A stretch of 49,308 bases of DNA from Klebsormidium nitens (Eukaryota > Plantae > Klebsormidiophyceae). The stretch lies in contig DF237370.1 in assembly GCA_000708835.1 (NCBI GenBank), forward strand, positions 1 to 49,308, in the 5' to 3' direction. This document shows positions 1-20,622 of the stretch, piece after piece. The notes below the pieces were generated by a model. It made no database searches. It was not told the origin of the DNA and worked only from the letters and a program-made list of their open reading frames with translations. The first letter of the stretch is position 1; the number at the start of each line of letters is the position of its first letter. The position numbers were made by a program, and so were the translations under genes.

Positions 1-318
1 AATCTAGGTTCAAGACTCTGCATATTGTCTAGTTGACCGATATCAAACGGACGGGGTCCTTATCTCTAATCTTGAGCTTTACTGCCAATGCCTTTTTGAC
101 TTTACACTCTCAGTCTCATCTTTTCCATCTCCACCTACTTCTGCGAAGTGCTCCGCCTAGTTGCTTGCATTCTGTTCTACAATCATGTCCAGGGACATGA
201 CTACCCAAAGATAACTCTCAAAACTCGGAAATACAGGATTTCAGAGTTTCCGCTGCCTGAATTTTCACGTGTTGTGCATGGTCTAACCAGCAGGCTGTTC
301 CGACTCTTTGGTTTGTAG

Positions 319-3300: not shown

Positions 3301-4132
3301 CATCGCCCATCTTCTCGCGCCAGGCTGAGGCGAAGCAGACTTATGTGTCAATGAGTGGAGCGGACAGCCAGCGTTGGGTGCGGTTACGGTTTCTGGTTGT
3401 GGAGGACAACCCTGTGTTAAGCCGGCTGACCGTAAGGGCAATAGAAAAGCTGGGAGCTCAGGTGGCGACAAGCGGAAACGGTCAGGAAGCGCTGGGAATG
3501 CTCCACGTGGCGAGCTCGGGCGGAAAGCCGCCGTTTGATGTGGTGCTAATGGACTGTCAGGTGAAGACCTTGCTCTTGAACTTTATGTTGCTGCGATGGA
3601 TCGCGGCGTCCTTGCGATTTCTGCTCTAGAAGCTTGTTGAGTCTTCTTTCAAGTTTTTGCCTCAACAAAGTGGAAGAGAAAGGCTGGAAACTCTGGACCT
3701 TGCATGTTGTATTGTATACTGGGCCTTCTCACATAGGGGTACTGACATGTCCTCCTAGACAAAAGCTACTTAGGTCCTACCCACACCTCGGTTTGTTCAA
3801 GACTGCGGATCCATTTGATATTGAAGGCACTAAGCTGCAAAAGGTCCTTCTACCACAGAGTGTCGTTCACCTCAATCGAAGTGTCACCCTTCTTTCTTCA
3901 GATGCCAGTGATGGATGGATACACCGCGGCACGGAGGATCCGAGAGACAGAGTTGGGCGCCGCGAGAAGGAACAGGGTGACCATCATAGCACTGACAGCA
4001 GACGGGAGCGAGGATGCAGCGAAGCGTTGCGTCGAAGCGGGCATGGACGCAGTGATGACCAAGCCATTTGGGCAGGCGGCTCTAATAGATTTAGTAGAGA
4101 GGCTAGTTGATGAAAAGGCTCGCAGTGTCTAA
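319..4132 (+). CDS. Hybrid histidine kinase, AHK1/CKI1-like (5'-partial; HATPase + receiver-like + receiver domains)
   Basis: Exons 319-445, 831-919, 1323-2268, 3064-3560, 3902-4132(TAA); all GT-AG, phases consistent, 630 codons. Motifs: IEAGKMVLDKVPFDL; N-box RIRQIFSNLLSNSIKFT; G1 FEVEDTGRGIP; G2 HGGTGLGLGIV; VVWIV...VQKPLYRSKV (resembles the AHK1 receiver-like segment); receiver FLVVEDN...VLMDCQMPVMDGY...IIALTA...MTKP. The H-box and sensor exons lie upstream of the window. Confidence 0.9.
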
Positions 4133-6065
4133 GAAGATTCACAAGGCTGGATGGCGACCGCTAGAAACCGAGCCGCAAAACATCAAGGCTCAATACGAGG
4201 AGCTTAGGATCAATACGCAAAGCTGCGACGCTGCGCGGGTATCACTAAATCAGACCTAGGCGAACTATAGTCAAGCAGAGCCTGCGATTGACAGGGGATT
4301 GTCATGAGAAAGCAAGCGAGCCAGTTGGCCAGGGAGAAGTAAGCAGCCTGAAGGGTATCTTGAAAACAAAGACGTAGTCCTTCTAGTAATTTGGCGCCCG
4401 TGTATATTTTTTGTGCCCACAGTGAATGCATTTGATCGTTTCGTCTGGAATAAGCGCCCATCCATCTTTAAATCTAACACGAACTCATCGCCTACATATA
4501 ACATTAATCATTCAATGGAATTCTGTTGTATGGAGCGTGTCCGTTAGGCAGCTCCGAGTCTGTGCAGTGATCGGACCGCATCATACGTCCGGTCACTGAC
4601 TATACTATCAGTGGTGCCAGCCTCCTTGAGACTTAGGCGTTCCTGCATCCATTCATGGGTTGAAGTCCCTCAACGCTATAGTTAATTGACCGAGCTTGTG
4701 GTGGCGGCCATCGAATCTGTCTTAGCAGACTTAGTCTACGCTGGCCGCCTCGGTTCTGCATGGACCGCTTCAACCATTGAATCACGGACGGTCAGTGGTG
4801 GTTGTCATACATGTACTACACATCAGCCACGACCGGCAAGTCTGCAAGTCTGCGCGCGTGCACACAGGATTCCAAAGCCGGCCCTCGCATGCAGGTCACG
4901 AAGATCCAAAAAAATACAGAGCCTGCCTGCAGTGATTGTCTTCTGTGTTCAATTTCAAGCCCTTCGAGCGTTCTCCGACGTCGCCGCAACTTGTCTGCGG
5001 GGCCAGACATACGTGCTAGTGTAGCTGGAGTCCGCGTTGGGCGCGGCAGTGTTCGGACTTTCGCGCGCAGAAATCTTAGCCACGGAAAAGGGCAATTTTG
5101 ACGCGTAGTCTGCTTCACGCGCGATCGAGTCTGGCCGACTCGGTGATCGCGCATGGCAAATTACTACGGTAAGTTAAGTTCCGACGCGTGCAACCTGAGG
5201 GAACGGCCCGCTGCGGTCGCGCGGCTGCTAGTCCAGCGCGGAGGGCTGTGCGCATAAGCGTGCCTGACTCCACACCTAGAGCCACCGTCTCAGGGGCGGC
5301 TGGACCAGACTGGTTAGGTCATAGTGGTTCGATGGTGGTTCACTTTTAGTGGCTTTTCTTCTGATATGCACTCGAGGTCAATCAGCCCTGTAACGGAGTC
5401 CTCTCATAATTCGGGCCCATGTCGCGGTGATTGTGAGAGCGCATGCTGTTGTCGCCTAGCAAATTTTGAAACACGGTTGTGTGTGCTTCTTTCGCACCAG
5501 AACTTGATGGTTGCACTTTTGTAAGCTGCCAGAAGCTCCTTTGAATTGATACGGCCACCACATCGGATTGAACTCAGATGGGCGTATAAAAGTTCCACTT
5601 TGTCAAGCTTGTCATCAATCTCCGTTTCTACAGTTTGACGAACGATGCTGATTATCCGATTAACTTGTCTAGAGGGTGTCGAAAGCCCCCGCTGCCTGGA
5701 GATAAACCTGCTTGTGAAAATACAAAACGCTGGTGGCTTTCTAAGCGATGATGAGCCGGCAGCATGTTTTGACTATTTTCGCCCAACTGATCTCCTCATT
5801 GCTTCAACTCGTGAATGATCAACCAACTACTCAACCGCAGAATGCACCTCTTAGAATGTTTCAGTGCGCCAGCTGCGCCAGCTGTCACGAATTGCAAAAT
5901 GAATCTCGACCGCAGTCACCTATACTGAATTATGCAACCTGTAAGCTATGTACTGTCCTCAAGGACCCAACTGGAGCGCCCTTTGAACTTAAAGCAAGCT
6001 TGGTTCAAGCTTCGACGGCGTCCGCTCTGGAAGGAATTGGAACCCGAGCACGGCCCCCGCGGGGC

Positions 6066-6810
6066 TCAAGTGGAGCCGGTTGCTTTCGGCGCCCTGAACG
6101 CTTCCAGGATCCGCAGACGGGCGCCGATCGCCTGCACGCCCGCCTCCTTGAGTTGCTCAGGCGTCATCGTGGCCAAAATGTCGACCGTCACCTCCGCCTG
6201 AAAAACGAAATCCAATAAAGAAGTCAGCGCTGGACGGCAGCGTGCATTAGACCTGTTTCGCCGCTTGCTGAACGGACCAGTGGCTAATTCAACTTTTTCG
6301 ACGGCTGCTAGAAGCGAGCTGTGTATGTAAGCGTAGATTTCCGATAAGGAGGCCTGCTAGAAGAAGGATAGCTTTGACCTCCAAGTCCGCTTCCGATTCT
6401 GGAACTTAGGACCTTTATTTCCGACCCGCAGAGAGATGCACAACCTCTAAGGAACCGGAGCAAACTCGTGAGCAAACACATTCCAACTTGAGACAATTAC
6501 TGGCCTCGACGAATTCCGGGCTGAGCTTACGTGCGTTACAAAATGCAAGGCTGCCGCCAAGTTTTTGAGGGGGCCTTTCCAAGCCGCCAATCTATGACAG
6601 CCACTCAGAAGGAACTGAATGGCCGCCGCCACCGTGGTTCACGGATATTCCGACAAACGAATGCTGAGTTGTTGCAGTTCCGGCAGGAGTCGACCGGAAC
6701 TTACGTAAACAGCGGGGCCCAGAAAACTCAGAAAATGTTTGCATGCCTTACCTCCTCAAGCACGCTCGCGTACCGCCCCAGGCCCATCCCGTCCAGAATC
6801 TCGAAGAGTC
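6066..6810 (-). other. C-terminal SAM (sterile alpha motif) domain, split by an intron
   Basis: [19 protein letters not shown] | [34 protein letters not shown]. Donor GTAAGG after 6752, acceptor CAG before 6197; matches the SAM pattern L..LGL..Y...F....I....L..L...DL...GI...G.R.+IL. Confidence 0.8.
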
Positions 6811-9800
6811 CCGTTGGGTCGCTCAACCCGTCCTGTACGCCTAACCCAGTTCTCCATTTGATCCCGTCCTCCTGTGCCGGTGTCTCCCGCCCGCTTGGCA
6901 TCTGCTGAGCCGCCACGCGGCCCAGATCCGTCGACGGCCTAGGCACGGCCACGTGGCTCGTCACGTGTTCCGGAAGAGGCCTGTCGCCGCTTCTGTTTAG
7001 CGCCTGAGCTGCCACGACCGGAATGTTGTTCACAGAGCTCTCGTCCACTCGGAGCGTGCGTACCGGGTCAGGGTTGACGGCCGGGGCGGACTCCTCCTTC
7101 TGAGCAGTCATTCCGCTGAACGATCCGCTCCTCCGCAGCGGAGTTATGCCCAGGAGCGCTGAACCGAGGCTACGTCTTGGGGGCGTGCGAGTCCGCTCCA
7201 ACTTCTTTTCCCGCCCCGGAGCTGGCCCGCCTCCACAGCTGACGTCATCAGAGACGTAGCCGCTTGGCAGATCCCGAGCGTACTCGAGATCCTGCTCTTT
7301 CCGGGGCCCCGTGCGAGTCCGGTCCAACTTTCTTTCTCGCCCCGGAGCTGGCCCGCCTCCACAGCTGACGTCATCAGACACGTAGCCGCTTGGCAGATCC
7401 TGAGCGAACTCGACATCCTGCTCTCTCCGGGGCCCCTCGCTCTTGAACCTGGAAGTCTTGCGACTTGGCCCTTCAAGCGACTGCTTCAGAAGCGGCGAGA
7501 CCGAAGGGGGCAGCGAAGCCGGGTCGATTTTCGCGTGCCTCTTCAGGAGATCGGGGGATGAGTCTGAGCGCGCGAGGGTCGGCCGGTTCTCCGCGCGCAG
7601 CGCCTGCAGCCCAGCCTCGTATTCGCCGTACTTCAGCAGGAAAGTCTCCATCGGTCCTTTGCCCTTGATGATGCGACGGCCGACCTGTACGAATACATCT
7701 TGCGCTCGCTCATTTGTTGAAAAGAGAGTTAAGCTGCTGAACTCTAAAGAAGGAGAAAAGAGCCAGCAGTCTCTTTCGATTATGGTTGAATTTCCGTATC
7801 AAGGCGTCACAGATTGGTGCACGCGAACACGAAGTGCGGCAGTGAAAGCGCTCAATCTCCTGAAAATCCGTCGCATTACACGCGTAGAATCTCAACCCAA
7901 CCTCATCAGAGCTTCCACTTCTCTTTGGTTTCAAATATCGCTTCAGATTGAGCTCCGGTCTCAGATGCCACAAAAAGCTTGAGATACGATACCCCGCGTT
8001 CCAGCCAGCTACTTGCAGAAGTTTCCTGCTTTGAAATGTCAGTCTGAGCCAAGCACGATACTTTCGTTGTATAGAAGTTCAAGTGACCAGCCCGGTCCAC
8101 TTTTGAATTAGAGGCGCCCCCCGCATAGCTGTGCAACGTCCTCAAAGCTGCTGCACCTGTCTTTTGGTCGCTAACAGATTGGCTGCTATCTGGGCGACCG
8201 ACGGGGTGCGCTTGCGGCGTCGAAGTCGCCGGCAGAACAGTCGGATGCGCGCTCTTTTGTGATCCTAATGTTCTAAAGCAAGAGGAAAGCACCGAAAGCA
8301 AAGCCAGCTTCTCACCGGTGCAAACTCGAAGGAGTCCTGACAGCGCTCGTATGTCGTCATGCTGGTGTGGATGCTCATCTGGAACCCGTTGCTCTCCATG
8401 CGGCTCGCGGTGTTGACCGTGTCGCCGAAGAAACAGTAGCGCGGGCACTTCGTCCCGATGACACCTGAGGAAAGAAATATAGGTATCTGATGTCTGTATT
8501 TACCTGCTTCTTCACTCATCAATTCCAATAGTAACGAACTAGGTGCCGGCAGATCTTCACTGAAGCCCCTGTCAAACTCTGGAACAGAAGAGCGATACCT
8601 CAGCGGCAAGGGTCGGATGAGAATCCGGTGGTAGCGCGAACCGTTCTCAGCCGAGTGCGTCTGTCGAAGCTGAATCGTCCAGTCCTCTGACCTGTCTAAA
8701 AGGGAGAGCTCGCATGCTGTTCTCCAAATCTCAACGGGCATGAGTTGACGCAATTTTCACGGGACTTATTCTACAAGCCCATCTTTGTCCAGAAGTGGAT
8801 GGACAAACTGTTCAAGTGCTCTGGATCGGCGCCAACTTCTTCATTGATCAACCTTTCAAGGCAGATACGTCCACGGGCAGCGATGCAGTGGTCCAACTCT
8901 ATTTTTCGAAACAATCTTGACTCCAAGAGATTCAAAACCTCAATCAATCGAAGAGAAGGCCCAATCATTACCTGCATACGCCGGGCCAGTGTGTATCCCA
9001 ACCCGAATGCGCACTGGGTCCACGTGGTTTGGCTGCTTGACGTCGCGCACTTTGGCGAGCATATCCATGGCCATGCGGACGATCCGAAGGGCGTGGTCGG
9101 GCGATCCATCGTGACCCGCCACCACCATGTAAGCGTCGCCGATTGTTTCCACCTGTGAGATTCAAAATTCAATCCAGTCATCCATATTGAAAACCAATTG
9201 CGCGTTCCAGTGACGGTTTTCCAACGGCTCAGAAAGTAGCTCTGAGCATCGCAGATCAGCCGGAGTACTTTCCCCGCCGGGGTACTCTCTTTTGTGAAAC
9301 GGTTTCACAAAAGAGAGCGCTTTGGCCTGCAGCTGTGAAAAACGATGAGAAGCAGACCATAAGACGAGGTACTACGCGGAGGCGCAAAGCTTTCTCTTTC
9401 CGCCATTGAGTCACTTTTTCAGAACGGGTTAAGCCCTGTCCAATTCAAAACGTCGATCGGTCGCACACAAGGAGCGGCCAGGCTATGTATGTCATCCGAG
9501 GCGCCACTTGAACTTGCAAAGAGACAGGGATGAGGCGTTAGTGACTGTGGTCAAGGAAAGACTGGAGCCCCTCACCATAAACTCAAAAGGCTAAAGAACT
9601 TAAAGAAGAGGGTGGAAACTCATATATTACCTCCACTTCGGGGCGACACGTCACTTCGTCGCTTGTTTAGATATGCAGCTTACGGATGTAGCTCCTCTCT
9701 CCCTCCTGAGGAATTTGACAGAAAGCCCCTGATAGAGAGCTTGTGCTGAATACCGGTTTCATAAAATCCTCACCTTGTAAACACCGTGCTTGTCAACCAG

Positions 9801-12800
9801 AGCGTCAAAGGCCGTAAACATCTCGTTGAGCATGAGAATGAGATCTTCCGTTGCGGAGGAGCCGGAAATCTCCGTAAATCCTACGATGTCGCTGAACAGA
9901 ATCGTCACCTGCGACGAATAAGGATCGAAAGAATCAGAGATCTTCACTCACATGCCTTCAAATGTGCCCCGAAATACCGTGGGGAGACGTTGCGTGGAGA
10001 ATCGGAGTCTGGCAGAGCAAGGATGCTGCTGTCAGTAACCAGACAGAAACGCTTCTTGCACGCGAATTGCTTGATCCCCTTTGGCTAAAGGGTCTAATCT
10101 TTGATTGAGCAGAGAGGGCAATCGAGGAGCTCTGCAAGCTTTTTCCTTCCTTTCAATTCCTCCTGCCATTATCCTGGGTATGCATTCCCGGAAACTAAAT
10201 CGCTTTTCTTCACTTCCTTACTCCTGCTGCAGTATATTCCTCTGTTTGTACGTTACTCCCCCTGTTCATCCTAAAGCCCGATGCCGACCACAGCGCATGC
10301 ACACTCACCTCCTTGTGACTGTCCGCGATAAGAGACTGTCCCGCGCTCAGCCGTTCGATGATCGAATCAGGTAGCATCTTCTTGAGCAGTTGGTAGCTCT
10401 TCTTAGCCTCGATTTCCACCCGCCACAGCCTCTTGATCTTGAGCTGCACCTCGATACGCGCCAGGATCTCCAGCCGCTTGAACGGCTGCAATCAGGGGAG
10501 GAGTCCTCTAGTAATGATTTTTCAAACAATCTGCACTCATCAGTGGAGCTGAGCTCGGCGCCAAAATGGATGGGAGGTTTTCGCCACGCGGCGGAAACAG
10601 TAAGCGGACCTCTTGTAAATGCTGAAGGTTTTGACACGTGCCTCGGGCAGCTCAGTCGCCAAGGATCGCGCGGCAAATTGGATGGCCGAAAGCTCAACCC
10701 TTAGTGGTGGAAATCAGAGGAAGGGATCGGTATTTGGAGAACTCGGGACCTTTCCTGAGCGCGGTGAAAACCCTGTTCCGCTCAAAACAGCTGAGAGCGA
10801 AATCCAGGGAGAAGAGCCGGTTTTGGAGGCTTTGAGAAGCTTACCTGGTTTTGGAGACATGATGGAAAGCGTAGTCCTGAAATCACTTCTGGAATTTTAG
10901 CTTAGATCTGAATGCGCGCTCGAAGTCATTCTAACGTGGACGCCCTCGAATAGTCTGGCCAACGATCCGCAAGCCAGAAAAAGTGACATTGTTTTGCGGT
11001 GAGCTTTTCGTCGCCCGACTGACGTTGGACACAGTGAGATGTGCTACTTGGTCCGGGTTATCAGACGCCCGCTTTAAAGGCAAGATTAGTTGAGCATGCG
11101 ATGGCGCATGATTTCGTACGCCGGTCTCACCTTGGTTAGGTAGTCGTTGCTACCCGCACGGAGCCCCTTGACAATGTCTCCTTCCTGCGACTTGGCGCTG
11201 ACCATGATCACAGGAAGCGCGCTCGAGGGAAACATCTCGCGGACCTTCTTGCACACCTGCGGGAAAGAGATTGGGCAACTTATATGCTTCGTCCGGCTGA
11301 ATTCGCAGCGACAGCACTGAGAGTTGGTTGGGATCAGGCGGGGCTTCGTTCGATCCGAAATAACTGGAGAAACGCAGCAGTCAAATGAACGATTCCTTCA
11401 AGAGTGGGGCCATTAGTTCTCGTTTACATTCCCTGCCTTGAGATGGGATTGAATCAGAGGATCTGAAATTTTCCAAATCGGTGAGGTTCTGGGAACACTT
11501 TCGACGCGTTCTAAGGAACTTCAAAGGCTGATTAATATTCAGACGGTCTCTACTCCAAACGTGAAGAGTTGGATCTGGAAAGGTCTGTATTTGGTGCCCC
11601 TTCAGAAGCGGCTGCTCTGGAAGCGATGTGATATGCTTCGTGGATCCCAATACATCATCCAGACGCTTCAACCGTGAGAATCCGTCGTCCCTTCCGACTG
11701 GATTCAATTGCCTTTGCTTCTTCATCTGCTTCAAATGATTTCTTTCTCCAGAATCTACGGCTCCTTTTATCCTCCTTCTGGGCTTCCATTCGACTCATCT
11801 ACAGTGTTGGAGATCGGATAACGTTCGCAGCAAAGGTCACAAAGGTGGGGCGACCCGCTTACCTCGTATCCGTCCAGTCCCGGCATCATGACATCGAGCA
11901 TGATCAGGTCCGGAATGACTTCGCTGCCCTCCAGATATGCCAGGGCCTCCATACCGTCCATCTTCTTCGTGATCTGCGGGGAAAACGGGGCTGCTTTTGT
12001 TGAATTTCCGTGTACCTACCTGGCCCGGCAACTTAGTCAAGAATGCGATTTCAGAGCTCCACCTGAAGACTCGTTCTTTCAGTACGCGCAACGATCTGTA
12101 ATAGTTTGAAGAACGCACCGATCTGTTATAGTTTGAAGAACGCCCAATGGCTGTACGTGTAACAGTATGGTCAAAGGGGAACGAGCATGTTGGTTTGCTA
12201 GTGATGCCGGTTGTTTTGACAGAAACTTTCTTCTGAGCTTTCAGACATAACCGCTAAAGACACGCAGCGCAGCAAGGTTCCGAGTTCTTGATGGATCAGA
12301 CACGACCTTTGAGTTTCGACCTTTGAGTTTACAGTCGCTAAAGCAATAAGTGCTGGACGTACGGCATGTGTCCCTCTCCTTGGTTCTTGGTGACGTCGAG
12401 TTTTTTATCGCTCACAAAAAAGTGGAATCTGATAGCCGGCTTAGGCTCTACGGCAGACTAGGGACAGAGCGGATCGTGTCAATGATCTCAACAATCTGGT
12501 ACGTACCTTGTACCCGGCAGGCCGCAGCAGTCCGTCGACCACCATCTGGTTCACCCGGTCGTCGTCCACGCTTAGTATCTCGTACTGCCCGTGGACTTCG
12601 TAGTGAGAGCGCAGCTTGGTCGGATAGTGCACGGCAGTCGAGCTGTGGTCCTCAGTCTGCAATGAGAGAACGGCTGGACTAAGGCTGAGAGAACGGCTGG
12701 ACTGAGGCGGGGTGTCGACTTTTTCCTGCCCGCTAGCAAGCTTGATCTGTGTAACTCCCAACTGGATCCTGACGATCATTTTGGATACATCGCTGTGCCG

Positions 12801-15800
12801 TCTACCCGGTGATGATTTCCATTCAGCCTTATCTGCTCTGCTTCGTGGAGCAGATAATCTTCCCCGAATCATTCCAAACAATTGTTATGAAGAAAGTCCT
12901 GAACGCAAGTTGGAAAAATATCTTTCGTTGAATCCCTTCTCGTGGAAACGTGCATGTGTACCAGAGGGAGAAGACCCTACGGATACCCGCAAGGTTGCTT
13001 TATGTTTAATCTCAACAGCGTTGGGCTTCATGACGTCACGATGTCAACTCCACAACCTAGGGGTCGAACCATATTGGACAGCTTGCACCTCGAGATTGTG
13101 GGAGTTCGTTGAAATAGTAGCTCGACGCCCAACTTTGGCTTCTGAAATGCCCGCGACTCACCTGGTCTTTGAAGGAGAGCTCTACCTCCACGGGCTTGAG
13201 TGACCGCAAGTCGGGCCATAAAGAACCCGCCTTCCGCGCTATCTTTGACGATTCTTGTCCAGCGGTCGCCGGCGCCGAAACGGCCCGCTTCGGCAGCTCA
13301 AACTCGCCCACATAAAGATTTCCGACGAGCCTCGTGCTCGCACACCGTGAAAGGGACCCCTTCTTGCCGCTCTCGGGGGTGCTCCCGCCGTCCCCTTTGG
13401 GAATTCCCGCGCCGCCAGCTTCGAACGTCACTGCTCGCTTTTCATCTTGTGTGACGTCACTGTCGGGGATGGCTGCCAGAGCGGTTTTGGGGGTCAGTGT
13501 GACGTGCCCCTTGCCGTCACTGCAGACGAACATTCGACCTGGGGACCCCGTCAACTTTTGTTTGAGCGATGCGGCCATGGGTGACGCGGCCGCGGGTGAT
13601 GCGGCCTTCGGTGATGTGTTCTTCGGTGACCTGGCTCCGGGAGGCGTGACAGCCTTCGGTGACGTGCCCTTCGGTGACGTCGCCTTCGGTGACGTGGCCT
13701 TAGATGACGCCGTCTTTGGTGTACTGTTGAGGCCGTCGTCAGGTGTCTTGACAGCGAGCGACACCAGCCTTGAACGCGGAGCCGGACCGGGTTTGCTTTT
13801 ATTAACATCAACCTGCAGTGGCTTCGAGGCTTTCAATATATGATCAGGTGTATGCTGGTCGTAGGCCTTTTACTGTGAGGAACCAAAGCCGGAGATGGAA
13901 GTTGGAACTACTTTACAATGAGGGAACGGAAAGATCCAGTACTGCATGTGACAACATAACAGATGTCAGCTTAAAATGCACGCTTATGCCAACCAACCTC
14001 GAGAGATAACAAGCTGTGAATTCAGCTCGATGAAGAAGTCTTCTGACACAACAGAAGGTAGCCGCCAACCACCGCAACAGGGTCCTCTCTGAAGCGTACT
14101 ACTTTCTGCGAGCATTTTTCCGATGCCAGTTCGTACTCACAGATCCAACCGTCTTTTGTTCGCATGACTCAGGGAACCTTCCAGCCGTTAAACGCAGAAT
14201 GACTTTCATCTTCCTTCCTACGATTATAAGCTGTGAGACCTCGTATCGCGCACGTTGGCGCGGACCGCTTTTTGCGATGTGCTCACATGCTTGAGGGGCA
14301 GCTTGAGTGTGAAGCAACTGCCGTGCCCGATTTCGGACGTCACGGAGATGGTTCCGCCATGCGCGCGCACAAGGGAATCCACGAGGAAGAGCCCCAGCCC
14401 GGTTCCACCGCGCTGGTCCATACTCGTCTCATTCACTTGCTCGAACGCGAGGAAGATCGTCTGCAGCTTGTGGCTAGGGATGCCGATGCCTGCGAAAGCG
14501 AGAACAAGGGATTGAGAACAGGGTAAATATGTTGGTCTATTGCCAAAATTGGGTGCGCTTTTGCACGGAGTCCCTGAAAAGGCAGAAATCCACGAAGATA
14601 GAGTCGAGCTGTCGCCCCGAGGTTGCGGATAGGGAGAAAGATAGTGGTCGCCAGCACACTTTTAAAGGGGAATAACAAGGATGGACAGGAGCATCAAAGC
14701 GATCGGCCATGTGATGAATGACAGAGAACATGGTTGGCAGAAAGCCAGGGGAGCAACTGACACCCTCAAGGAGACGGGATTCAAACGGCCCACGACAGAC
14801 AATTCGCATCGTTTGATGTGGTGCAAGAGGCGTGTTCTCGTTACTACTCTGACAAATTGCAAGATGAAATCACTGACCTGTGTCTCTGACGTCCACAATC
14901 ATGAACTCATGCCCGTCATCAGTTTCTCGTACTCTGGCGCAGACGCGTATCTCTCCTGCAAAAGACCAGGTCGACTTGGCTTATGAAAGTGGTTCGATCT
15001 TCTCAAGTACAGCAGGCTTTTTAATAGATTTTGAAATGCTCATAGACGCAAAGTTATCAGCCGGTCCCCAAATCTGTGAAAAGAAGAGTCGTCAAGATGC
15101 TCAAAGGTCCTGCAGACTCTGCACCAATTGGCATATAGAAACTAAAGATCTAGTCGGCCCTCAAGAGTCTCAGAGTGAAATATAAATCCACGGCTTCTAG
15201 AATGAGAGAGGTAAGCGACTGGAAGTTTACTGCATCTCAAAAACTGGATGAAGCGCCGGCTATTCAAATGTGGGGCGACTTGGCCTAAAGGAACCTGCAG
15301 CATAAGACTTACCACCGTCGGTGAACTTGGCAGCATTGCCGACCAGATTGTGCAGAATTTGAATCAGCCGTGCCTGATTACAATCGATCTCCGGAATGTC
15401 TTTGGAGACGTCATTATAGAGCTGCAAAAAAAGCAGGCAAACAGCCTTCAGTGTAATGGGGTAGGTATGGTCCACTGACCGGAGACGTTGTGCTTTGAGA
15501 GAGCGACGGCTTCCGGATACGAAGAGACAAGGCTGAAGCTAAACCTGCTTCTTTCGTCGTACGACTGAGCTTTCACGAGGATCAGCTTGGATCTTCTTTG
15601 ATTATGGGACGAGAGCGTAACATGTTCTTTATTTGTCGTCTATTAGCCTCTGTTGAGAAGATCTTACCTTTACGTTCCATTTGACCATAGGTGATGTCAG
15701 ATCCATGACGTGATCTACAAGGTGGCGAAGGTAGACTACCTCGTAGTGCAACGTCAGCTTGCGCTGGCGCAAGGATTCGACGTCCAAAATATCTGCAATT

Positions 15801-18800
15801 GAGGGAAACCTCAGTAAAGGTTTGCAGCATCATTCACTCGCAGGCGAAGAGCTCCTAGTGTCTTGCAAGTAACATTCAGATGTAAGGTGAGGTCAGCTGT
15901 GCTACTTTGCGAGCTCGACCTTCCGCTGCCTTTCAGAACTTTGTGGTGGCAAGTCAAAGGACTTGGACGAGTTGTTCGGAAGTGTCAGACTTGGCCGGAA
16001 AGGGAACTTACCATTTACGAGATTCTTGAGACGGCCGCCACTCTGCTTTATTGTCTCTAGTGTCTTCTTCATGTCTTCATTGACCTCCCCCAAGGACCCC
16101 TGCAAGCGTCCGTCTAAGTTCTGCTCGCGTCCGAAAAGTACAGACAGTTTGCAAGCAAGGAGACGGACAGCAACCATAGAAGTACTACCGATCTGGCACC
16201 CAACAAGCAGATAATTAAGATCGATCTAGAGCTCATCAAGTCAAACTCTGTTCACCTGCGTCGTCAAGCTCGTCTTCGAAGGACGACAGAGCGGGCTAAA
16301 TTTCAGCAAGGAACGTGAAGTTGGAGCAGACAATGTCCAAGGAGCTATTCGAACAGGACTGCAAGCCGAATAGCTCAGAGTCAGCGGTCTCACCAGGAGC
16401 ATGGCGTCAGACAGTCCGATGATGCCGTTTAAAGGTGTCCGCAGCTCGTGCGACACGGACGCCAAAAAACGGTTCTTTTCTGTGATAGCCTGTTGAAGCT
16501 GTTCGATGAGCGCACTTTTGTTGCTCTCATCGCGGGCCACCTCCGCGACGCGCCTGTTCTCCTCAAGAGACAAAAACTTCCCTTCGAGTAGTAAAGCCGA
16601 GAAGACAAACTGCGTCCAATTCGAGTTACTAGTCAGATCTTTGCAATGAGAACAAAGGTGTTTCTGAGCTAGTCGCAAGAGCATAGGTATCGCTTCGATC
16701 TTTATGGCATCCTTTCTGGATTCGGTCCTTGTCGGAATGCTTCAAAAGCTCGCCAGAGAAATGTGCTCAGGCTGTGGCGCCGAAAGTCTGAGACTGGACG
16801 TAAAGTATAGAAGCCAAGCATCGCAATGGCTATTTTCAAAAGGAATTCCCTTCTGCTTGAGGGCCCTCTTACCTTGCACGCGAGTTCGAGCGCAAGGAAC
16901 ATGTGAGCCTCCATTATTGGGCTGACCAGGTTCGTCTCGCTCAAGAATGCAACGCACGGGAAGGCGGTCCATGTTGTCAGAATGTATATTTGCAGAAGGT
17001 GGAAGCTCCAGTGGCATCCCGAGTCACGTGTCTGCAAGAGAAACGTCTATGAAGATTTGACTTCGACTGGCAGATTTGCGTGCGTAATTGGCTCAACGTC
17101 GAGTTTCATCAGAGGCGAAAAATGCTGCAAGCTTGGAAGGGAAGTTGTACGCAGGACTCATTCCAATTTCAATGCCGTGTAGTAGCATCGCGAACTCGTA
17201 GCCAGGAATTCAAAAGGCTTTCTAAAGGTGTCGGCCCTTTTCACCTTTCATACCCTGGAAATGGTTGATTTCAAACCTCTCAGCAACGTCTATCTTATAC
17301 TGGTGGGAAGAAAGATGCATGTAGCTAGCTAACATCGTTCCGAACAGCCGACTCGAGCTGCTTGCTGCCTTGTTTCCCATTACCTCGAGTACCGCGTCGT
17401 TGGTCATTCTGTGCACGTTCCTAAGAAGGGTCACAAAAGCGAAGCCCGCTGCAGTTAAGCAGACGCCGCTCATAAGGTTGGAGGAGCTGAGAAGTCCGTT
17501 GAGCCCGACCATCAGGATGAACAGGTCACAGAAGGTATTCAGAATGATCTGCAACCAAAGGCAATTTCGTCAGACCCTGAAATATCCGCCACTTCTGAAA
17601 GCAGTCCTGATAGGGCCACGGATCGGTTTTGAAAGACACTGATGTGAACAAGGTCATCACTGGTCAGGCTGGTTTCCAATCTTCATTGTAGTTCTTCTGC
17701 AAATATTTCTTCGCAGGAGTCTTGTTGCCTTGAGTCCCCATCCTTGATGGAACATAGAAATGGCAGAAAGCGCTTCCTTCAACCTCAAAAGCGTGTGAAC
17801 ATTCTTAGTTCTCAAAACCAGGCGTGTATCCGCGTGCAGCAACGTTTCCTTTCATCTACAGCTGGGAGCACTTTGAAGATGCCCAGAGAGACCAACAAGC
17901 CGGAGAACACAAAGGCTGGCTCTATGGAGCTAGAGCCTCCGGCCATGAGGAACGGAGCACGATTCCTCCATCTCGACCAAGTCAAGCTGCAACTTAGAGC
18001 GTCCAGGGTGCAATTTGGCAGCACACTGGTTCATCTGCCTGCTATGGCAGCTAAGAATATCTCCGGGACTGTCCTCACCTGACGATGGCTCTGGCCGGAT
18101 ATCGAGGCAGTCAAGTATATCATGATGGGCGTTGTGAGCATCCACTGTAAGAAGCGGGCCGGATAGTGCGGTCGCCCAAAGTGGTCCACTAACACCGGTG
18201 TGTAATCTCGGTCCAGAAGAACGTAAGTGAGCAATGCAGTTCCGTTGATATACGCTACCAGAGCGGCCTGCAGATAAGGCAGGATGTAGACTCTGGACAA
18301 GGTGCAGCCTGAACCGAATCTGCTTCGAGCCGGGCTTCGAGCAGCCAGTTTTGACGCCATCAAGCAACCAGCTCCAGACTGTCAATCAGCAACGCCATCC
18401 TCGGCGGAAAGAACGTCGAAGCCTGAAGAATCAAGCTGAAAGAATACAAACGGTGAAGCTTTTTATTCGTAAATGATTCACTTTCGCAGCTCAGCTCCTA
18501 AAACTTTCATACCATCATCAAATCGTTCAGAAGAAAAACGTGCCTACGGTAGCAGCTTGTATATCGTTCAAACGGTCAAGATCTCGCTGAAGCTATTCAC
18601 CAAGGTGTTGGAAAACGAGAGCTTTATGAAGAGGCAGGATATGGTCAGCACAAAGAGAACTTCAAGAACAGGAAAGAGTACTTACAGAAGCCCGTTTTTC
18701 CCTCTCAGTACGGCACGTGAAGATGCATGTGGAAATCACGAGTGCGCAACTGAAAGCAATCACTCCCACCTGCATAACAGACGATGAAGTTCGTATATTT

Positions 18801-20622
18801 CTTGTGGAAGCCAGGGGAGTACGAGGGAACAAGTGGGAGATTCAGTAAGCTCATATGTAGAAGAAACGTGGCGATTCTTTCCATATACTTCTCCAACGAG
18901 AAGAAGCTAGTCGGTGAAACAATATTCAATCTGCACCTCGGTGACTGGAAAGCTTTTGAAGAACAGAGCACGAATCTGCCAGTTGCTTGCTGTTGCTTTG
19001 ATTTGGATAGAAGGAGCGTGTCACCAGAATTTGATCTCTGGGACTGAATACTGTTTTACTGGTGTGGTTCGTAAGACGATCGAGGGGATATAACCTCAGA
19101 CTTCTAGCACTATACAGGGCCAAGCGAAGTAAAGGCATGGCAGCTCCTTGGAGTCTCCCCGACAGGAAAGAGAATTATTTGACAGCCCTATGACGAGTCA
19201 AGAACAGGTTGTACTTTGCGATCTCTTGGTGGAAACAGCCTCTTTGAGCTTTCAGGTTGTAGTACTTCTTTGAAGGTCCTTGACTTTCGAAAGTGAACAG
19301 CCGTGAGGAAAGGCCCAAACACAAGCGACAAGGTAGTACTGAGGAGCAGGTCAATTTACCTACATCAGGCAACGCTGTCATGAAAAGCTGTAGCCTTCTG
19401 CCTCTCTGACAAAGAAGGGCCAGCATGCTCGTGAATCTGCAATTCTACCATTTAGAGACAGAGCTTCCCACTGTTTGATAGGCTGCAAGGAAGCTGCTTC
19501 GCCTTTGCAAGTAACGGTAGGTCCTCGAACATACCCTGGTATGGTCCCCAGGCGGGGGGCCTGTGGTGTACTGGCTGGCATCCAGGTACAGGCTTCGCAC
19601 AAAAAGGGCCAAGGCCGTGACAAGCGCGGCAGCAAAGATCATCAAGAACACCGTAAGTTGAGTGCACCGGGCCTCTGCTCGCAGGGGGGACTCCTGGACA
19701 GGAATGAGGACCAATGAGAATCACATATGAATCAGAGCGCTCGGGCAAGTACTGCAAATGCTTTCAAAATCGCATCAGTTGGACACTTGTCACTGGCAGA
19801 TGATATCCAGACACCTTGAACATTGTCTGGTTAGAGGAAGGTCAACAGGTCGTTACATGCTCGCTTTAGAGACTGGGTGCTGAACTGGTGTTGATTGGCC
19901 GGTGTTTAGTGTGCCACATATGCAGAAGAGTCAGCTATTTGAAAGTCTGCGGCAGTCTTCCAAGAAAACTACTCAACTCCTGGATGTCGTCATCAGTCAT
20001 ACCTAAGGACAGGACGGGTTATTAGGAAGGCAATTGCAAAACCCGAAACGTGGCAGTGTGGTTTGCTGGTAGGACATATTCCAAGCAATCGAGCCTGAAC
20101 AATTTATATGCCAATCTTCTGTCGAAGCCCTTGTAATGGCTGCCACCAAAGACAAAGAAGGAACAAGATATTTGAAGAGATGCCACTCACCATCTTGCTA
20201 CCCTTCGGAGCTTCTGTTTGATTCAGGACAGTGTCAGCAACTTGCAGGTCACCTGGACCTCCTCCCCATGAAACTGCACTTTCCTCCTTGTCCACATGTG
20301 TGGAGTCATGAATGGGTGCCCCTGACTTGGATGGCTTTTCAGAAGGAGTACAAGTGTCTTCTTGTTCGCCAAGCTCTCCATCATCCTTGAACGCCGCCAT
20401 ATTACCTCTTCCGAACCTCTACATGCACTGTGCTTAGTGTTGAACTTGCGTTTGCTACCGTATTGAAGGCTCATGATGTATACATGAGATTGAATTTAGC
20501 CAGGTATATCTTTCACGTCGAAAGCGCCATGAACTTGGTCCTACAACGGTAGCTTGCTGCTCTGACTTTACATATCCTGAGGTGAACTTGGCTGTGCCTG
20601 CTGTGCCTGCATCATTGGCCAT
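6066..20622 (-). CDS. Two-component cyclase opsin (2c-Cyclop / histidine-kinase rhodopsin): rhodopsin-HisKA-HATPase-receiver-guanylyl cyclase-SAM, ~1530 aa, ~23 exons
   Basis: Minus-strand exons: (20622-20572, tentative), 20418-20191, 19693-19535, 18769-18686, 18267-18079, 17548-17384, 17031-16873, 16609-16394, 16099-16012, 15792-15668, 15421-15313, 14955-14878, 14489-14287, ~13812(or 13854)-13162, 12656-12507, 11973-11863, 11256-11131, 10485-10309, 9908-9774, 9152-8972, 8464-8316, 7684-6752, 6197-6066(TGA). All GT-AG and in phase. The start codon (20622 vs 20400) and the 14287/138xx junction are uncertain. Confidence 0.92.
7184..7435 (-). repeat. In-frame 126-bp (42-aa) tandem duplication in the cyclase-SAM linker
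   Basis: [42 protein letters not shown] / [42 protein letters not shown]; units 7435-7310 and 7309-7184. Confidence 0.95.
7620..9908 (-). other. Class III nucleotide cyclase domain, guanylyl-type
   Basis: [12 protein letters not shown]; [12 protein letters not shown]; IRVGIHTGP; [25 protein letters not shown]; [12 protein letters not shown]. Both metal-binding Asp residues are present, and the Glu (KVE) and Cys (RYC) are the GTP-specifying residues. Confidence 0.93.
10309..12656 (-). other. Receiver domain plus signalling helix of the 2c-Cyclop
   Basis: ILSVDDD...[15 protein letters not shown]...VIMVSAK...DYLTK|[12 protein letters not shown], followed by helical [14 protein letters not shown]. 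Confidence 0.93.
12087..12144. repeat. 27-bp intronic tandem repeat (x2)
   Basis: cgcaacgatctgtaatagtttgaagaa / cgcaccgatctgttatagtttgaagaa. Confidence 0.85.
12663..12708. repeat. 23-bp tandem repeat in the polypyrimidine tract of the acceptor at 12657 (minus strand)
   Basis: tgagagaacggctggactaaggc / tgagagaacggctggactgaggc. Confidence 0.85.
13570..13720 (-). repeat. Coding 15-bp minisatellite encoding (T/A)SPK(A/G) pentapeptides in the kinase-receiver linker
   Basis: [52 protein letters not shown]; plus strand shows repeated cttcggtgacgt units. Confidence 0.85.
14287..16530 (-). other. Histidine kinase core (DHp + CA) of the 2c-Cyclop
   Basis: H-box [18 protein letters not shown]; N-box [17 protein letters not shown]; G1 VRDTGIGIP; F-box IFLAFEQ; G2 [10 protein letters not shown]. 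Confidence 0.93.
16560..19693 (-). other. Microbial (type-1) rhodopsin domain with an extra N-terminal TM helix (part of the 2c-Cyclop gene)
   Basis: TM0 [20 protein letters not shown]; [18 protein letters not shown]; [16 protein letters not shown]; [16 protein letters not shown]; [13 protein letters not shown]; [16 protein letters not shown]; [15 protein letters not shown]; [12 protein letters not shown]|FVFSALLL. The retinal Schiff-base Lys is the last codon of exon 17031-16873. Confidence 0.9.

What the first reader, a model, noticed from the sequence alone, without database searches (positions are those of the whole stretch)
6066..20622. Complete rhodopsin-kinase-receiver-guanylyl cyclase photoreceptor in a plant-lineage (probably streptophyte) alga
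Seen in sequence: one spliced gene links an 8-TM-type microbial rhodopsin that retains its retinal Lys to an intact H-box His, receiver Asp and a cyclase with all catalytic residues and GTP-type specificity residues. Established: Chlamydomonas and Volvox 2c-Cyclops with this layout are light-inhibited, ATP-dependent guanylyl cyclases, and land plants have no rhodopsins. Inference: the neighbours (AHK1-like kinase, plant class III TPP, telo-boxes) point to a streptophyte alga. This would be a light-to-phosphorelay-to-cGMP pathway retained in the lineage leading to land plants and a candidate optogenetic tool. Homologues may already be listed in in-silico surveys.
Basis: partly seen in the sequence, partly recalled or inferred. 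Interest (0 to 1): 0.85.

Follow-up and report, generated by a model that had tools for sequence, protein, structure and literature searches.

The report
Known Klebsormidium rhodopsin-kinase-cyclase gene KnRh2
This is a real, expressed gene for a light sensor fused to a histidine kinase, a receiver and a guanylyl cyclase in the streptophyte alga Klebsormidium nitens, but it is already annotated and named (KnRh2); what is new is that the public protein model lacks one membrane helix.

Summary
On the minus strand, about 20400 to 6066, lies one intact 22-exon gene (my model: 1509 aa). It encodes an 8-helix microbial rhodopsin, HisKA/HATPase, a receiver, a class III cyclase and a SAM domain, with all key residues present.

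Spliced RNA contigs from four studies join the retinal-Lys exon to the kinase, receiver and first cyclase exon. All 10 joints are GT..AG on the minus strand.

The window is 100% identical to Klebsormidium nitens NIES-2285 scaffold DF237370.1, so the streptophyte inference is right.

The gene is not new. It is kfl00421_0020 / GAQ88354.1, named KnRh2 and listed as HisK-RR-Cyc-SAM in Awasthi et al. 2020 (PMC7693036). I found no functional study. This scan already reported its paralogue KnRh1 on another piece of the same genome.

Two things are added here:
- The public model omits an 84-nt exon (18769-18686) encoding helix A. The paralogue conserves it, and RNA contig length supports it.
- Intron 6, exactly between rhodopsin and kinase, is partly retained in RNA contigs.

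The most likely function is a light-regulated, probably light-inhibited, ATP-dependent guanylyl cyclase like Cr2c-Cyclop1. This is untested.

Read laying was given 6,000 letters.

The parts
20191..20400 (-). Exon 1 (aa 1-70). Proposed start ATG at 20400. The public model starts at ATG 20193-20191, the last codon of this exon.
   Evidence: DP gene model. In-frame ORF with a strong donor, ATG|GTGAGT. By length, the X5 RNA contig reaches about 20414. Weak codon score. The start codon is not settled.
19535..19693 (-). Exon 2 (aa 71-123): extra N-terminal helix TM0 and a loop
   Evidence: Same as the public GAQ88354.1 sequence. Strongest hydropathy peak, centred at residue 93. The X6 contig ends exactly at this exon's 5' edge plus one shared base.
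18686..18769 (-). Exon 3 (aa 124-151): rhodopsin helix A, absent from the public protein model
   Evidence: Canonical CAG|G and T|GTAAGT sites, phase 0 to 0. 50-53% aa identity to the KnRh1-type locus L003 and 40-44% to L001/L004. The same helix is in printed KnRh1. Contig-length arithmetic supports inclusion.
18079..18267 (-). Exon 4 (aa 152-214): helices B and C, with R189, Q192, W193, T196, T197
   Evidence: Pfam Bac_rhodopsin 1.7e-7. Aligns to rhodopsins 6KFQ, 7CJ3 and BR, placing Q at the D85 position.
17384..17548 (-). Exon 5 (aa 215-269): helices D and E
   Evidence: The RNA loose end behind 17033 reads the end of this exon. Hydropathy peaks.
16873..17031 (-). Exon 6 (aa 270-322): helices F and G, with E318 and retinal Lys K322 as the last codon
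   Evidence: Pfam Bac_rhodopsin 2.4e-4. RNA contigs cover it in all four runs laid (X5, X6, X7, X11).
16610..16872 (-). Intron 6 (263 nt), between rhodopsin and kinase. Spliced in X5, X6 and X11, but also covered by RNA contigs in X5, X6 and X7.
   Evidence: Joint 16873|16609, plus contigs over 16582-16831 and 16780-17033. Read through, the frame stops 56 codons after K322.
16394..16609 (-). Exon 7 (aa 323-394): linker helix and H-box with H376 and T380
   Evidence: HisKA 1.4e-10. RNA joints on both sides.
16012..16099 (-). Exon 8 (aa 395-424): DHp second helix. The public model uses an acceptor 21 nt upstream.
   Evidence: RNA joint 16394|16099 in X5, X6 and X7. The public sequence has 7 extra residues here.
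15668..15792 (-). Exon 9 (aa 424-465)
   Evidence: RNA joints. 53% identity to L003.
15313..15421 (-). Exon 10 (aa 466-502): N-box
   Evidence: RNA joints. Matches to HKRs.
14878..14955 (-). Exon 11 (aa 502-528): start of the G1 box
   Evidence: RNA joints.
14287..14489 (-). Exon 12 (aa 528-595): G1 and G2 boxes, end of the ATPase domain
   Evidence: HATPase_c 2.2e-15. RNA joints.
13162..13812 (-). Exon 13 (aa 596-812): low-complexity Ser/Pro/Lys-rich linker between kinase and receiver
   Evidence: RNA joints on both sides. No Pfam hit. 15-nt repeats.
12507..12656 (-). Exon 14 (aa 813-862): receiver start, acidic pocket D843/D844
   Evidence: RNA joints. 69% identity to L003.
11863..11973 (-). 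Exon 15 (aa 863-899): receiver phospho-acceptor D889
   Evidence: Response_reg 2e-5, 25.1 bits, below the 30.2-bit cut-off for this piece alone. RNA joints.
11131..11256 (-). Exon 16 (aa 900-941): receiver S919 and K941
   Evidence: Response_reg 9.5e-6, 26.2 bits, below the cut-off for this piece alone. RNA joint, and a loose end that reads the start of exon 17.
10309..10485 (-). Exon 17 (aa 942-1000): last receiver helix, coiled-coil signalling helix and cyclase start, all in one exon
   Evidence: 85% identity to L003. Weak HNOBA C-terminal match, E 0.1. The 30-nt loose end of all four runs matches its first bases.
9774..9908 (-). Exon 18 (aa 1001-1045): cyclase, metal Asp D1007
   Evidence: Guanylate_cyc 5e-11.
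8972..9152 (-). Exon 19 (aa 1046-1106): cyclase, E1047 (base specificity) and D1051 (metal)
   Evidence: Guanylate_cyc 6.8e-16. Best solved matches are soluble GC alpha and GC-A.
8316..8464 (-). Exon 20 (aa 1106-1155): cyclase, C1116 (base specificity), N1123 and R1127
   Evidence: Guanylate_cyc 1.5e-13. Aligns to the same motif of GC-A, GC-C and Cyg12.
6752..7684 (-). Exon 21 (aa 1156-1466): end of the cyclase, a disordered tail with a 42-aa tandem repeat, and the first half of SAM
   Evidence: Single ORF. 126-nt x2 repeat at 7184-7436, 92% matches. By length, the X7 contig reaches about 335 nt into it.
6066..6197 (-). Exon 22 (aa 1467-1509 plus stop): second half of the SAM domain
   Evidence: SAM_1 5.5e-5, 23.9 bits against a cut-off of 23. 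Same C-terminus as the public sequence.

Best explanation
The locus is the Klebsormidium nitens gene KnRh2 (kfl00421_0020, GAQ88354.1), a two-component cyclase opsin of the 2c-Cyclop / histidine-kinase-rhodopsin family.

One mRNA encodes an 8-helix retinal-binding rhodopsin. A linker of fixed length (54 residues from the retinal Lys to the phospho-His) joins it to a histidine kinase. After that come a roughly 220-residue disordered linker, a receiver, a coiled coil, a guanylyl cyclase, a disordered tail and a SAM domain.

Shown here: the architecture, the intact catalytic residues, transcription and splicing.

Inferred by analogy with Cr2c-Cyclop1: in the dark the kinase autophosphorylates H376 from ATP and passes the phosphoryl group to D889. 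The phosphorylated receiver switches on the homodimeric cyclase, which makes cGMP. Light absorbed by retinal on K322 changes kinase output, most likely inhibiting it. The protein would then be an ATP-dependent, light-inhibited guanylyl cyclase.
For: Identity:
- The window is 100% identical to DF237370.1 of K. nitens.
- All eight tabulated KnRh2 residues and their spacing match.
- The printed GAQ88354.1 sequence is this protein, apart from three model differences.

Single transcript:
- Ten GT..AG joints appear in RNA contigs from four studies.
- A 2040-nt contig in each of X5 and X6 runs from exon 7 to exon 17.
- A 2521-nt contig in X7 runs from exon 9 to, by length, beyond the cyclase.
- The joint between exons 6 and 7 is seen in three runs.

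Catalytic residues are all present.

The cyclase exons match guanylyl rather than adenylyl cyclases best, with the Glu and Cys aligned.

The Lys-to-His spacing is 54 in this protein and in all 12 chlorophyte HKRs examined. It is also 54 in Cr2c-Cyclop1 (K298 and H352).

The mechanism in Cr2c-Cyclop1 was shown by mutagenesis (PMC6284317).
Against: - There are no biochemical data for KnRh2 or KnRh1 in the library searched.
- The sign and colour of light regulation depend on the opsin. The Cop5 opsin on the same enzyme is UV-activated and bistable (PMC8006352).
- KnRh2 has Gln at BR-85 like Cop6, but a Glu at BR-212. No other entry in the published table has a Glu there.
- Cop5 has the same layout and shows no cyclase activity, though it lacks cyclase key residues that KnRh2 keeps.
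- Part of the RNA retains intron 6, which would give a rhodopsin-only product.
Confidence: 0.6

Rival explanations
1. Same protein and the same phosphorelay, but with the opposite or a bistable light response. Light, or one colour of light, would activate the kinase and hence the cyclase, as in the engineered switch-Cyclop that carries the Cop5 opsin.
For: The opsin part alone sets the sign and colour of regulation in chimeras (PMC8006352). KnRh2 keeps a carboxylate (E318) at the BR-212 position, like Cop5 (Asp) and unlike Cop6 (Asn).
Against: At the BR-85 position KnRh2 has Gln, as the light-inhibited Cop6/Vop6 do, not Met as Cop5 does. No spectral data exist.
Confidence: 0.2
2. The cyclase is not the regulated output. 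KnRh2 would act mainly as a light-sensing hybrid histidine kinase feeding other phosphorelay partners, with the cyclase inactive or constitutive, as found for Cop5 in oocytes.
For: Cop5 has the same layout and shows no cyclase activity. K. nitens has 67 histidine kinases, so a large phosphorelay network exists (PMC6324907).
Against: Cop5's inactivity is ascribed to missing cyclase residues. KnRh2 has both metal Asp, Glu/Cys, Asn and Arg. The receiver and the cyclase start share one exon with a conserved signalling helix that is 85% identical to the paralogue.
Confidence: 0.1
3. The locus yields two kinds of product. Besides the full fusion, transcripts that keep intron 6 would encode a free 8-helix rhodopsin (322 residues plus a 56-residue tail) with no enzyme part. 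Sensor and enzyme would then be partly uncoupled by regulated intron retention.
For: Of the ten introns in the laid stretch, only intron 6 is covered by contigs in X5, X6 and X7. Its contig word depth is about 7, against 12-16 for the spliced contigs. In X7 the spliced 6/7 joint was not assembled at all. The retained reading frame stops inside the intron.
Against: Contig depth is a poor measure, and unspliced nuclear pre-mRNA gives the same picture. X11 shows other introns covered too. Contigs cannot show transcript ends. No protein evidence exists.
Confidence: 0.12
4. It is not a functional gene: a pseudogene, an assembly chimera or a chance run of domain-like ORFs.
For: None found. Only the start codon and the first exon remain uncertain.
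Against: - Uninterrupted 1509-codon frame with canonical splice sites.
- Spliced RNA in four studies at 99-100% identity.
- A co-linear paralogous locus with the same intron positions.
- The best codon score in frame for all 22 exons.
Confidence: 0.02

Closest known systems
KnRh2 = kfl00421_0020_v1.1 = GAQ88354.1 (Awasthi et al. 2020, Life 10:259, PMC7693036)
   Same: It is this gene. The scaffold is the same, and the printed sequence is the same from exon 2 to the C-terminus. The eight tabulated residues (Q95, T99, T100, L106, E221, T205, E213, K225) match in identity and spacing. The listed domains are also the same: HisK, RR, Cyc, SAM.
   Different: - The public model starts at ATG 20193, so it lacks my 69 N-terminal residues.
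- It omits the 28-residue helix-A exon (18769-18686).
- It has 7 extra residues from an acceptor 21 nt upstream of the one seen in RNA contigs (16099).
- The 'MotB' domain listed for it has no Pfam support in the linker exon.
Cr2c-Cyclop1 (Cop6) and Vc2c-Cyclop1 (Tian et al. 2018, PMC6284317)
   Same: - Same order of parts: 8-TM opsin, histidine kinase, disordered linker, receiver, guanylyl cyclase, long tail.
- Gln at BR-85 and Thr-Thr at BR-89/90.
- 54 residues from the retinal Lys to the phospho-His.
- H-box Thr, G-box, receiver Asp and GC-type cyclase residues.
   Different: - Shorter: 1509 aa against 2549 and 2210 aa for the predicted full ORFs.
- The kinase-receiver linker is about 220 residues rather than about 500.
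- Glu rather than Asn at BR-212, and Leu rather than Ile at BR-96.
- It has a C-terminal SAM domain; the same survey lists SAM for Cop5-8, which includes Cop6.
- It comes from a streptophyte, not a chlorophyte.
- Its activity is untested.
KnRh1 (kfl00193_0190, GAQ84541.1), paralogue in the same genome; L003 is a KnRh1-type locus
   Same: Same architecture including SAM, and the same intron positions wherever they can be compared. Amino-acid identity is 50-85% exon by exon. Helix A and TM0 are present.
   Different: KnRh1 is much longer, with a large tail. It has Asp at BR-212 and Met at BR-96.
Cop5 / HKR1 (Luck et al. 2012; Tian et al. 2021, PMC8006352)
   Same: Rhodopsin-HK-RR-cyclase-SAM layout, with a carboxylate at BR-212.
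   Different: Cop5 has Met at BR-85 and is a UV-A/blue bistable pigment. Its cyclase lacks key residues and is inactive. The KnRh2 cyclase residues are intact.
Fungal rhodopsin-guanylyl cyclases (BeGC1/RhGC; 6SIR, 6AO9, 5OYH)
   Same: 8-TM enzyme rhodopsin controlling a class III GC. The cyclase exons match these structures.
   Different: In RhGC the opsin is coupled directly to the cyclase by a coiled coil and is light-activated. It has no kinase or receiver and does not need ATP.

Membership tests
2c-Cyclop / histidine-kinase rhodopsin | Microbial (type I) rhodopsin domain with the retinal-binding Lys in the last helix | tested here: met
   Bac_rhodopsin hits on exons 4 and 6. K322 aligns with the helix-G Lys of 12 HKRs. 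R189, W193, T196/T197 and P198 are in helix C.
2c-Cyclop / histidine-kinase rhodopsin | Eight transmembrane helices: an extra TM0 before helix A, with a cytosolic N-terminus | tested here: met
   Seven Kyte-Doolittle peaks at or above the 1.3 threshold, plus helix C, which falls below it but is identified by motif. TM0 is in exon 2. Helix A is in exon 3, which is conserved in KnRh1-type loci. Topology itself is predicted, not measured.
2c-Cyclop / histidine-kinase rhodopsin | Histidine kinase directly behind the opsin, with H-box His, N-box and G-boxes | tested here: met
   HisKA 1.4e-10 and HATPase_c 2.2e-15. H376, T380, N-box, G1 and G2 present. Lys-to-His spacing is 54 here, in 12 HKRs and in Cr2c-Cyclop1.
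2c-Cyclop / histidine-kinase rhodopsin | Receiver domain with a phospho-acceptor Asp on the same chain | tested here: met
   Response_reg hits on exons 15 and 16, each below the Pfam cut-off on its own. D843/D844, D889, S919 and K941 present.
2c-Cyclop (cyclase-bearing subgroup) | Class III cyclase with complete catalytic residues and the Glu/Cys guanine-specifying pair | tested here: met
   Guanylate_cyc hits on three exons. D1007, D1051, E1047, C1116, N1123 and R1127 present. The best solved matches are guanylyl cyclases, with Glu and Cys aligned.
2c-Cyclop / histidine-kinase rhodopsin | All modules encoded by one mRNA | tested here: met
   Spliced RNA contigs join exon 5 through exon 17.
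2c-Cyclop | ATP-dependent cGMP synthesis regulated (inhibited) by light through His-to-Asp phosphotransfer | not testable with these tools
   Shown only for Cr2c-Cyclop1 and Vc2c-Cyclop1. No data on KnRh2 were found.
2c-Cyclop / histidine-kinase rhodopsin | Orthology to chlorophyte Cop/Vop genes, that is, vertical descent within green plants | not tested
   Cop5-12 sequences could not be brought into the tools. All that is known is that KnRh1-type loci are closer (50-85% identity) than Volvocine HKRs (30-51%).

The most novel reading that the evidence does not exclude
KnRh2 may be a functionally distinct 2c-Cyclop. Its Schiff-base region combines Gln at BR-85 with a Glu at BR-212, and no other entry in the published survey table has a Glu there. 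That could give a different colour or sign of regulation. Retention of intron 6, placed exactly between sensor and kinase, could be a regulated switch that releases a free 8-helix rhodopsin. Either would make it the first enzyme rhodopsin with a new regulatory mode in the streptophyte lineage.
Probability: 0.12. Interest if true: 0.55.

Novelty: already known. Interest (0 to 1): 0.27.

Why it matters
Land plants lack rhodopsins, and cGMP signalling in plants is poorly understood. A rhodopsin-driven phosphorelay-to-cGMP enzyme in an early-branching streptophyte alga is therefore worth testing. That point has been in the literature since 2020.

The practical value added here is a corrected coding sequence. 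A construct built from GAQ88354.1 would lack helix A and possibly 69 N-terminal residues. It would also carry 7 extra residues in the DHp domain, and it would probably not fold as a rhodopsin. Anyone wishing to test KnRh2 as an optogenetic tool should clone from cDNA or use the 22-exon model.

Tried and rejected
1. The search of protein representatives with the helix B/C exon gave only short fragments at or below 49% identity and no self hit.
2. Two homologous-protein searches failed to retrieve the annotated K. nitens protein. One used a Volvox HKR, the other an alignment of HKRs plus window exons. Both were swamped by bacterial hybrid kinases.
3. My first DP model contained three spurious exons:
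   - A 40-nt exon (16295-16256) and a 12-nt exon (12031-12020), both rejected by RNA joints.
4. I first matched the published numbering (Q95) to a wrong N-terminal model. The printed sequence showed the real reason: the public model starts at M plus exon 2 and lacks exon 3.
5. A start at ATG 20622 is rejected. It is in frame with 20400, but three stops lie between them.
6. No TM0 homologue was detectable by tblastn in L001, L003 or L004.
7. A paper search for the SRA and IMG accessions of the related loci found nothing, so their organisms remain unnamed.
8. The protein-atlas search was busy.
9. I made no tree against Cop5-12. Those sequences exist only as machine-read supplement text, and I did not type them in.
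10. I made no structure prediction.
Full report
**What is there**

Six-frame translation showed that the coding pieces lie on the minus strand. Pfam scans of the pieces gave, in order from 18.3 kb down to 6.1 kb:
- Bac_rhodopsin: 1.7e-7 and 2.4e-4
- HisKA: 1.4e-10
- HATPase_c: 2.2e-15
- Response_reg: two pieces at about 1e-5, each below Pfam's cut-off on its own
- Guanylate_cyc: 5e-11, 6.8e-16 and 1.5e-13
- SAM_1: 5.5e-5

The described domain series is therefore real and far beyond chance.

**Gene model**

I wrote a small splice-aware dynamic programme that scores codon usage and GT/AG sites. I then corrected its output with three kinds of evidence.

- RNA. Logan contigs of four runs from four studies (X5, X6, X7, X11) were laid on 11080-17079, which is 6,000 letters. 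They gave ten joints, all CT..AC on the plus strand, which is GT..AG on the minus strand. All have strong consensus sites. This removed two spurious mini-exons and fixed exons 6 to 16.
- A co-linear homologous locus, L003. It is a 30-kb Logan contig that I reached through an exon-sized rhodopsin ORF. It matches exon by exon at 50-85% amino-acid identity, from helix A to the end of the cyclase. It revealed an 84-nt exon (18769-18686) that my programme had missed. It also showed that helix A is spliced directly to helix B.
- The reading frame. The final model has 22 exons, 4530 nt and 1509 residues. All sites are canonical, there is one terminal stop, and the in-frame codon score is the best of the three frames for every exon.

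**One transcript**

- In X5 and X6 a 2040-nt contig runs from 16611 (exon 7, H-box) through all kinase, linker and receiver exons to 11131, and then 181 nt further. Its next 30 letters are exactly the start of exon 17.
- Exon 17 carries, in a single exon, the last receiver helix, a coiled coil and the beginning of the cyclase.
- In X7 a 2521-nt contig runs from exon 9 to 11131 and 977 nt beyond. By length that is exons 17-20 plus about 335 nt of exon 21, which covers the whole catalytic domain.
- The joint between the retinal-Lys exon and the H-box exon (16873|16609) is present in X5, X6 and X11.
- The letters beyond exon 6 read the end of exon 5.

Rhodopsin, kinase, receiver and cyclase are therefore on one spliced mRNA.

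**Residues**

- Rhodopsin:
  - R189, Q192 (BR D85 position), W193, T196/T197, L203 (BR D96 position).
  - E318 (BR D212 position) and K322 (retinal Lys).
- Kinase: H376 and T380 in the H-box, plus the N-box, G1 and G2.
- Receiver: D843/D844, D889, S919, K941.
- Cyclase: D1007 and D1051 (metal), E1047 and C1116 (base specificity), N1123 and R1127 (transition state).

The two cyclase exons that carry Glu and Cys find guanylyl cyclases as their best solved relatives: soluble GC, GC-A, GC-C, Chlamydomonas Cyg12 and fungal RhGC. The Glu and Cys are aligned in these matches.

Hydropathy shows seven hydrophobic segments in residues 80-330 above the threshold I used. Helix C falls below that threshold and is identified by its motif, which makes eight in all. 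One segment is a TM0 before helix A.

The retinal Lys and the phospho-His are 54 residues apart. The spacing is also 54 in all 12 chlorophyte histidine-kinase rhodopsins I had and in Cr2c-Cyclop1 (K298 and H352; PMC6284317). This points to a rigid, conserved coupling helix.

**Whose genome, and is the gene known**

A note from this scan (s1-353328) said that another piece of the same genome is Klebsormidium nitens and carries KnRh1. I tested this as follows.

- The GDP-mannose dehydratase exon in the window finds streptophyte proteins first. Its cluster holds GAQ88358.1 of K. nitens.
- The NCBI contig that encodes GAQ88358.1, DF237370.1 of GCA_000708835.1, is 100% identical to the window over 15.6 kb, at the same coordinates.
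- The window is therefore the first 49.3 kb of that scaffold, and the streptophyte inference is correct.

Awasthi et al. 2020 (PMC7693036) list KnRh1 and KnRh2 of K. nitens as HisK-RR-Cyc-SAM rhodopsins.

- Their residue table gives KnRh2 as Q95, T99, T100, L106, E221, T205, E213, K225. My model matches all eight in identity and spacing.
- Their supplement names KnRh2 as kfl00421_0020_v1.1 / GAQ88354.1 and prints its sequence. It is this protein.
- A 2026 preprint mentions KnRh1/2 only as nodes of a predicted interaction network.
- I found no functional study.

**What differs from the public model**

1. It starts at ATG 20193, the last codon of my exon 1. An in-frame ATG at 20400 with no intervening stop lies upstream. 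By length, the X5 contig reaches about 20414.
2. It lacks exon 3, the 28 residues of helix A.
3. It has 7 extra residues from an acceptor 21 nt upstream of the 16099 acceptor used in the X5, X6 and X7 contigs.

The evidence that exon 3 is used:
- Its splice sites are canonical and it runs from phase 0 to phase 0.
- It is 50-53% identical to the helix-A exon of the KnRh1-type locus, and printed KnRh1 contains that helix.
- Contig length agrees. The X6 contig has 598 nt upstream of exon 6. That equals exon 5 (165) + exon 4 (189) + exon 3 (84) + exon 2 (159) + 1 base shared by the spliced and unspliced forms.
- In other words, the contig stops exactly where a branch in the assembly graph is expected at the 5' edge of exon 2.

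As printed, GAQ88354.1 has seven hydrophobic helices, but they are TM0 plus B to G, which is not a rhodopsin fold.

**How it most likely works**

Shown here are the architecture, intact residues, transcription and splicing. The rest is inferred from the family.

- Tian et al. 2018 showed by mutagenesis how Cr2c-Cyclop1 works.
  - ATP-dependent autophosphorylation of the H-box His and transfer to the receiver Asp keep the cyclase active in the dark.
  - Green light inhibits this activity.
- KnRh2 shares Gln at BR-85 with Cop6/Vop6, so I take light inhibition as the most likely sign.
- The sign is uncertain for two reasons.
  - The opsin alone sets sign and colour in chimeras (PMC8006352).
  - KnRh2 has a Glu at BR-212, which no other entry in the published table shows.

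**An unexpected detail**

Of the ten introns in the laid stretch, only intron 6 is covered by contigs in X5, X6 and X7. It is the intron between the retinal Lys codon and the kinase. In X7 the spliced 6/7 joint was not assembled at all. Read through, the frame ends 56 codons after K322, which would give a rhodopsin-only protein. This may be unspliced pre-mRNA. Contigs cannot settle it.

**Verdict**

- The finding is correct as an observation and largely correct as an interpretation.
- The gene is already annotated, named and catalogued, and its kind is known.
- The scan had already met its paralogue, KnRh1.
- The useful residue is a corrected coding sequence and the intron-retention lead.

Noticed in passing
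window 16610-16872 (minus strand): Intron 6, exactly between the retinal-Lys codon and the kinase, is the only one of ten introns covered by RNA contigs in X5, X6 and X7. Retention would stop the frame 56 codons after K322 and give a rhodopsin-only product.
   Followed up: partly
window 18686-18769 and 16099-16120 (minus strand): The public protein GAQ88354.1 (KnRh2) omits the 84-nt helix-A exon. It also uses an acceptor 21 nt upstream of the one seen in RNA contigs, which adds 7 residues in the DHp domain.
   Followed up: yes
window 7184-7436: A 126-nt tandem duplication (2 copies, 92% matches) lies inside the C-terminal tail. It encodes two 42-residue repeats between the cyclase and SAM.
   Followed up: no
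window 13568-13721: 15-nt and 30-nt repeats encode a Ser/Pro/Lys/Ala-rich run in the kinase-receiver linker. Pfam finds nothing here, so the published 'MotB' label for KnRh2 looks like a low-complexity artefact.
   Followed up: partly
If the long 5' leader suggested by the X7 contig length is real, the mRNA carries several upstream ORFs.
   Followed up: partly
window 1308-4129 (plus strand): The 3' part of another hybrid histidine kinase (HATPase_c 2.8e-14, two Response_reg pieces) ends about 2 kb from the 3' end of KnRh2. The two genes converge.
   Followed up: partly
window 24693-27055 (minus strand): A trehalose-phosphate phosphatase gene. The ORF at 26555-27055 holds two similar stretches in a row, possibly a duplicated exon segment.
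   Followed up: no
window 46852-47324: A run of 473 N (an assembly gap) lies just downstream of the first exon of the GDP-mannose 4,6-dehydratase gene (GAQ88358.1), within one of its introns.
   Followed up: yes
L003:2870-12810 (Logan SRR23617307), L001/L002 (SRR14092360/59), L004:9755-12930 (JGI 3300060284): - L003 is a KnRh1-type rhodopsin-kinase-receiver-cyclase locus with the same intron positions.
- L001 and L002 carry a more distant KnRh1-type opsin.
- L004 is a metagenome locus with opsin, kinase and receiver but no cyclase seen in the stretch fetched.
- The organisms are unnamed.
   Followed up: partly
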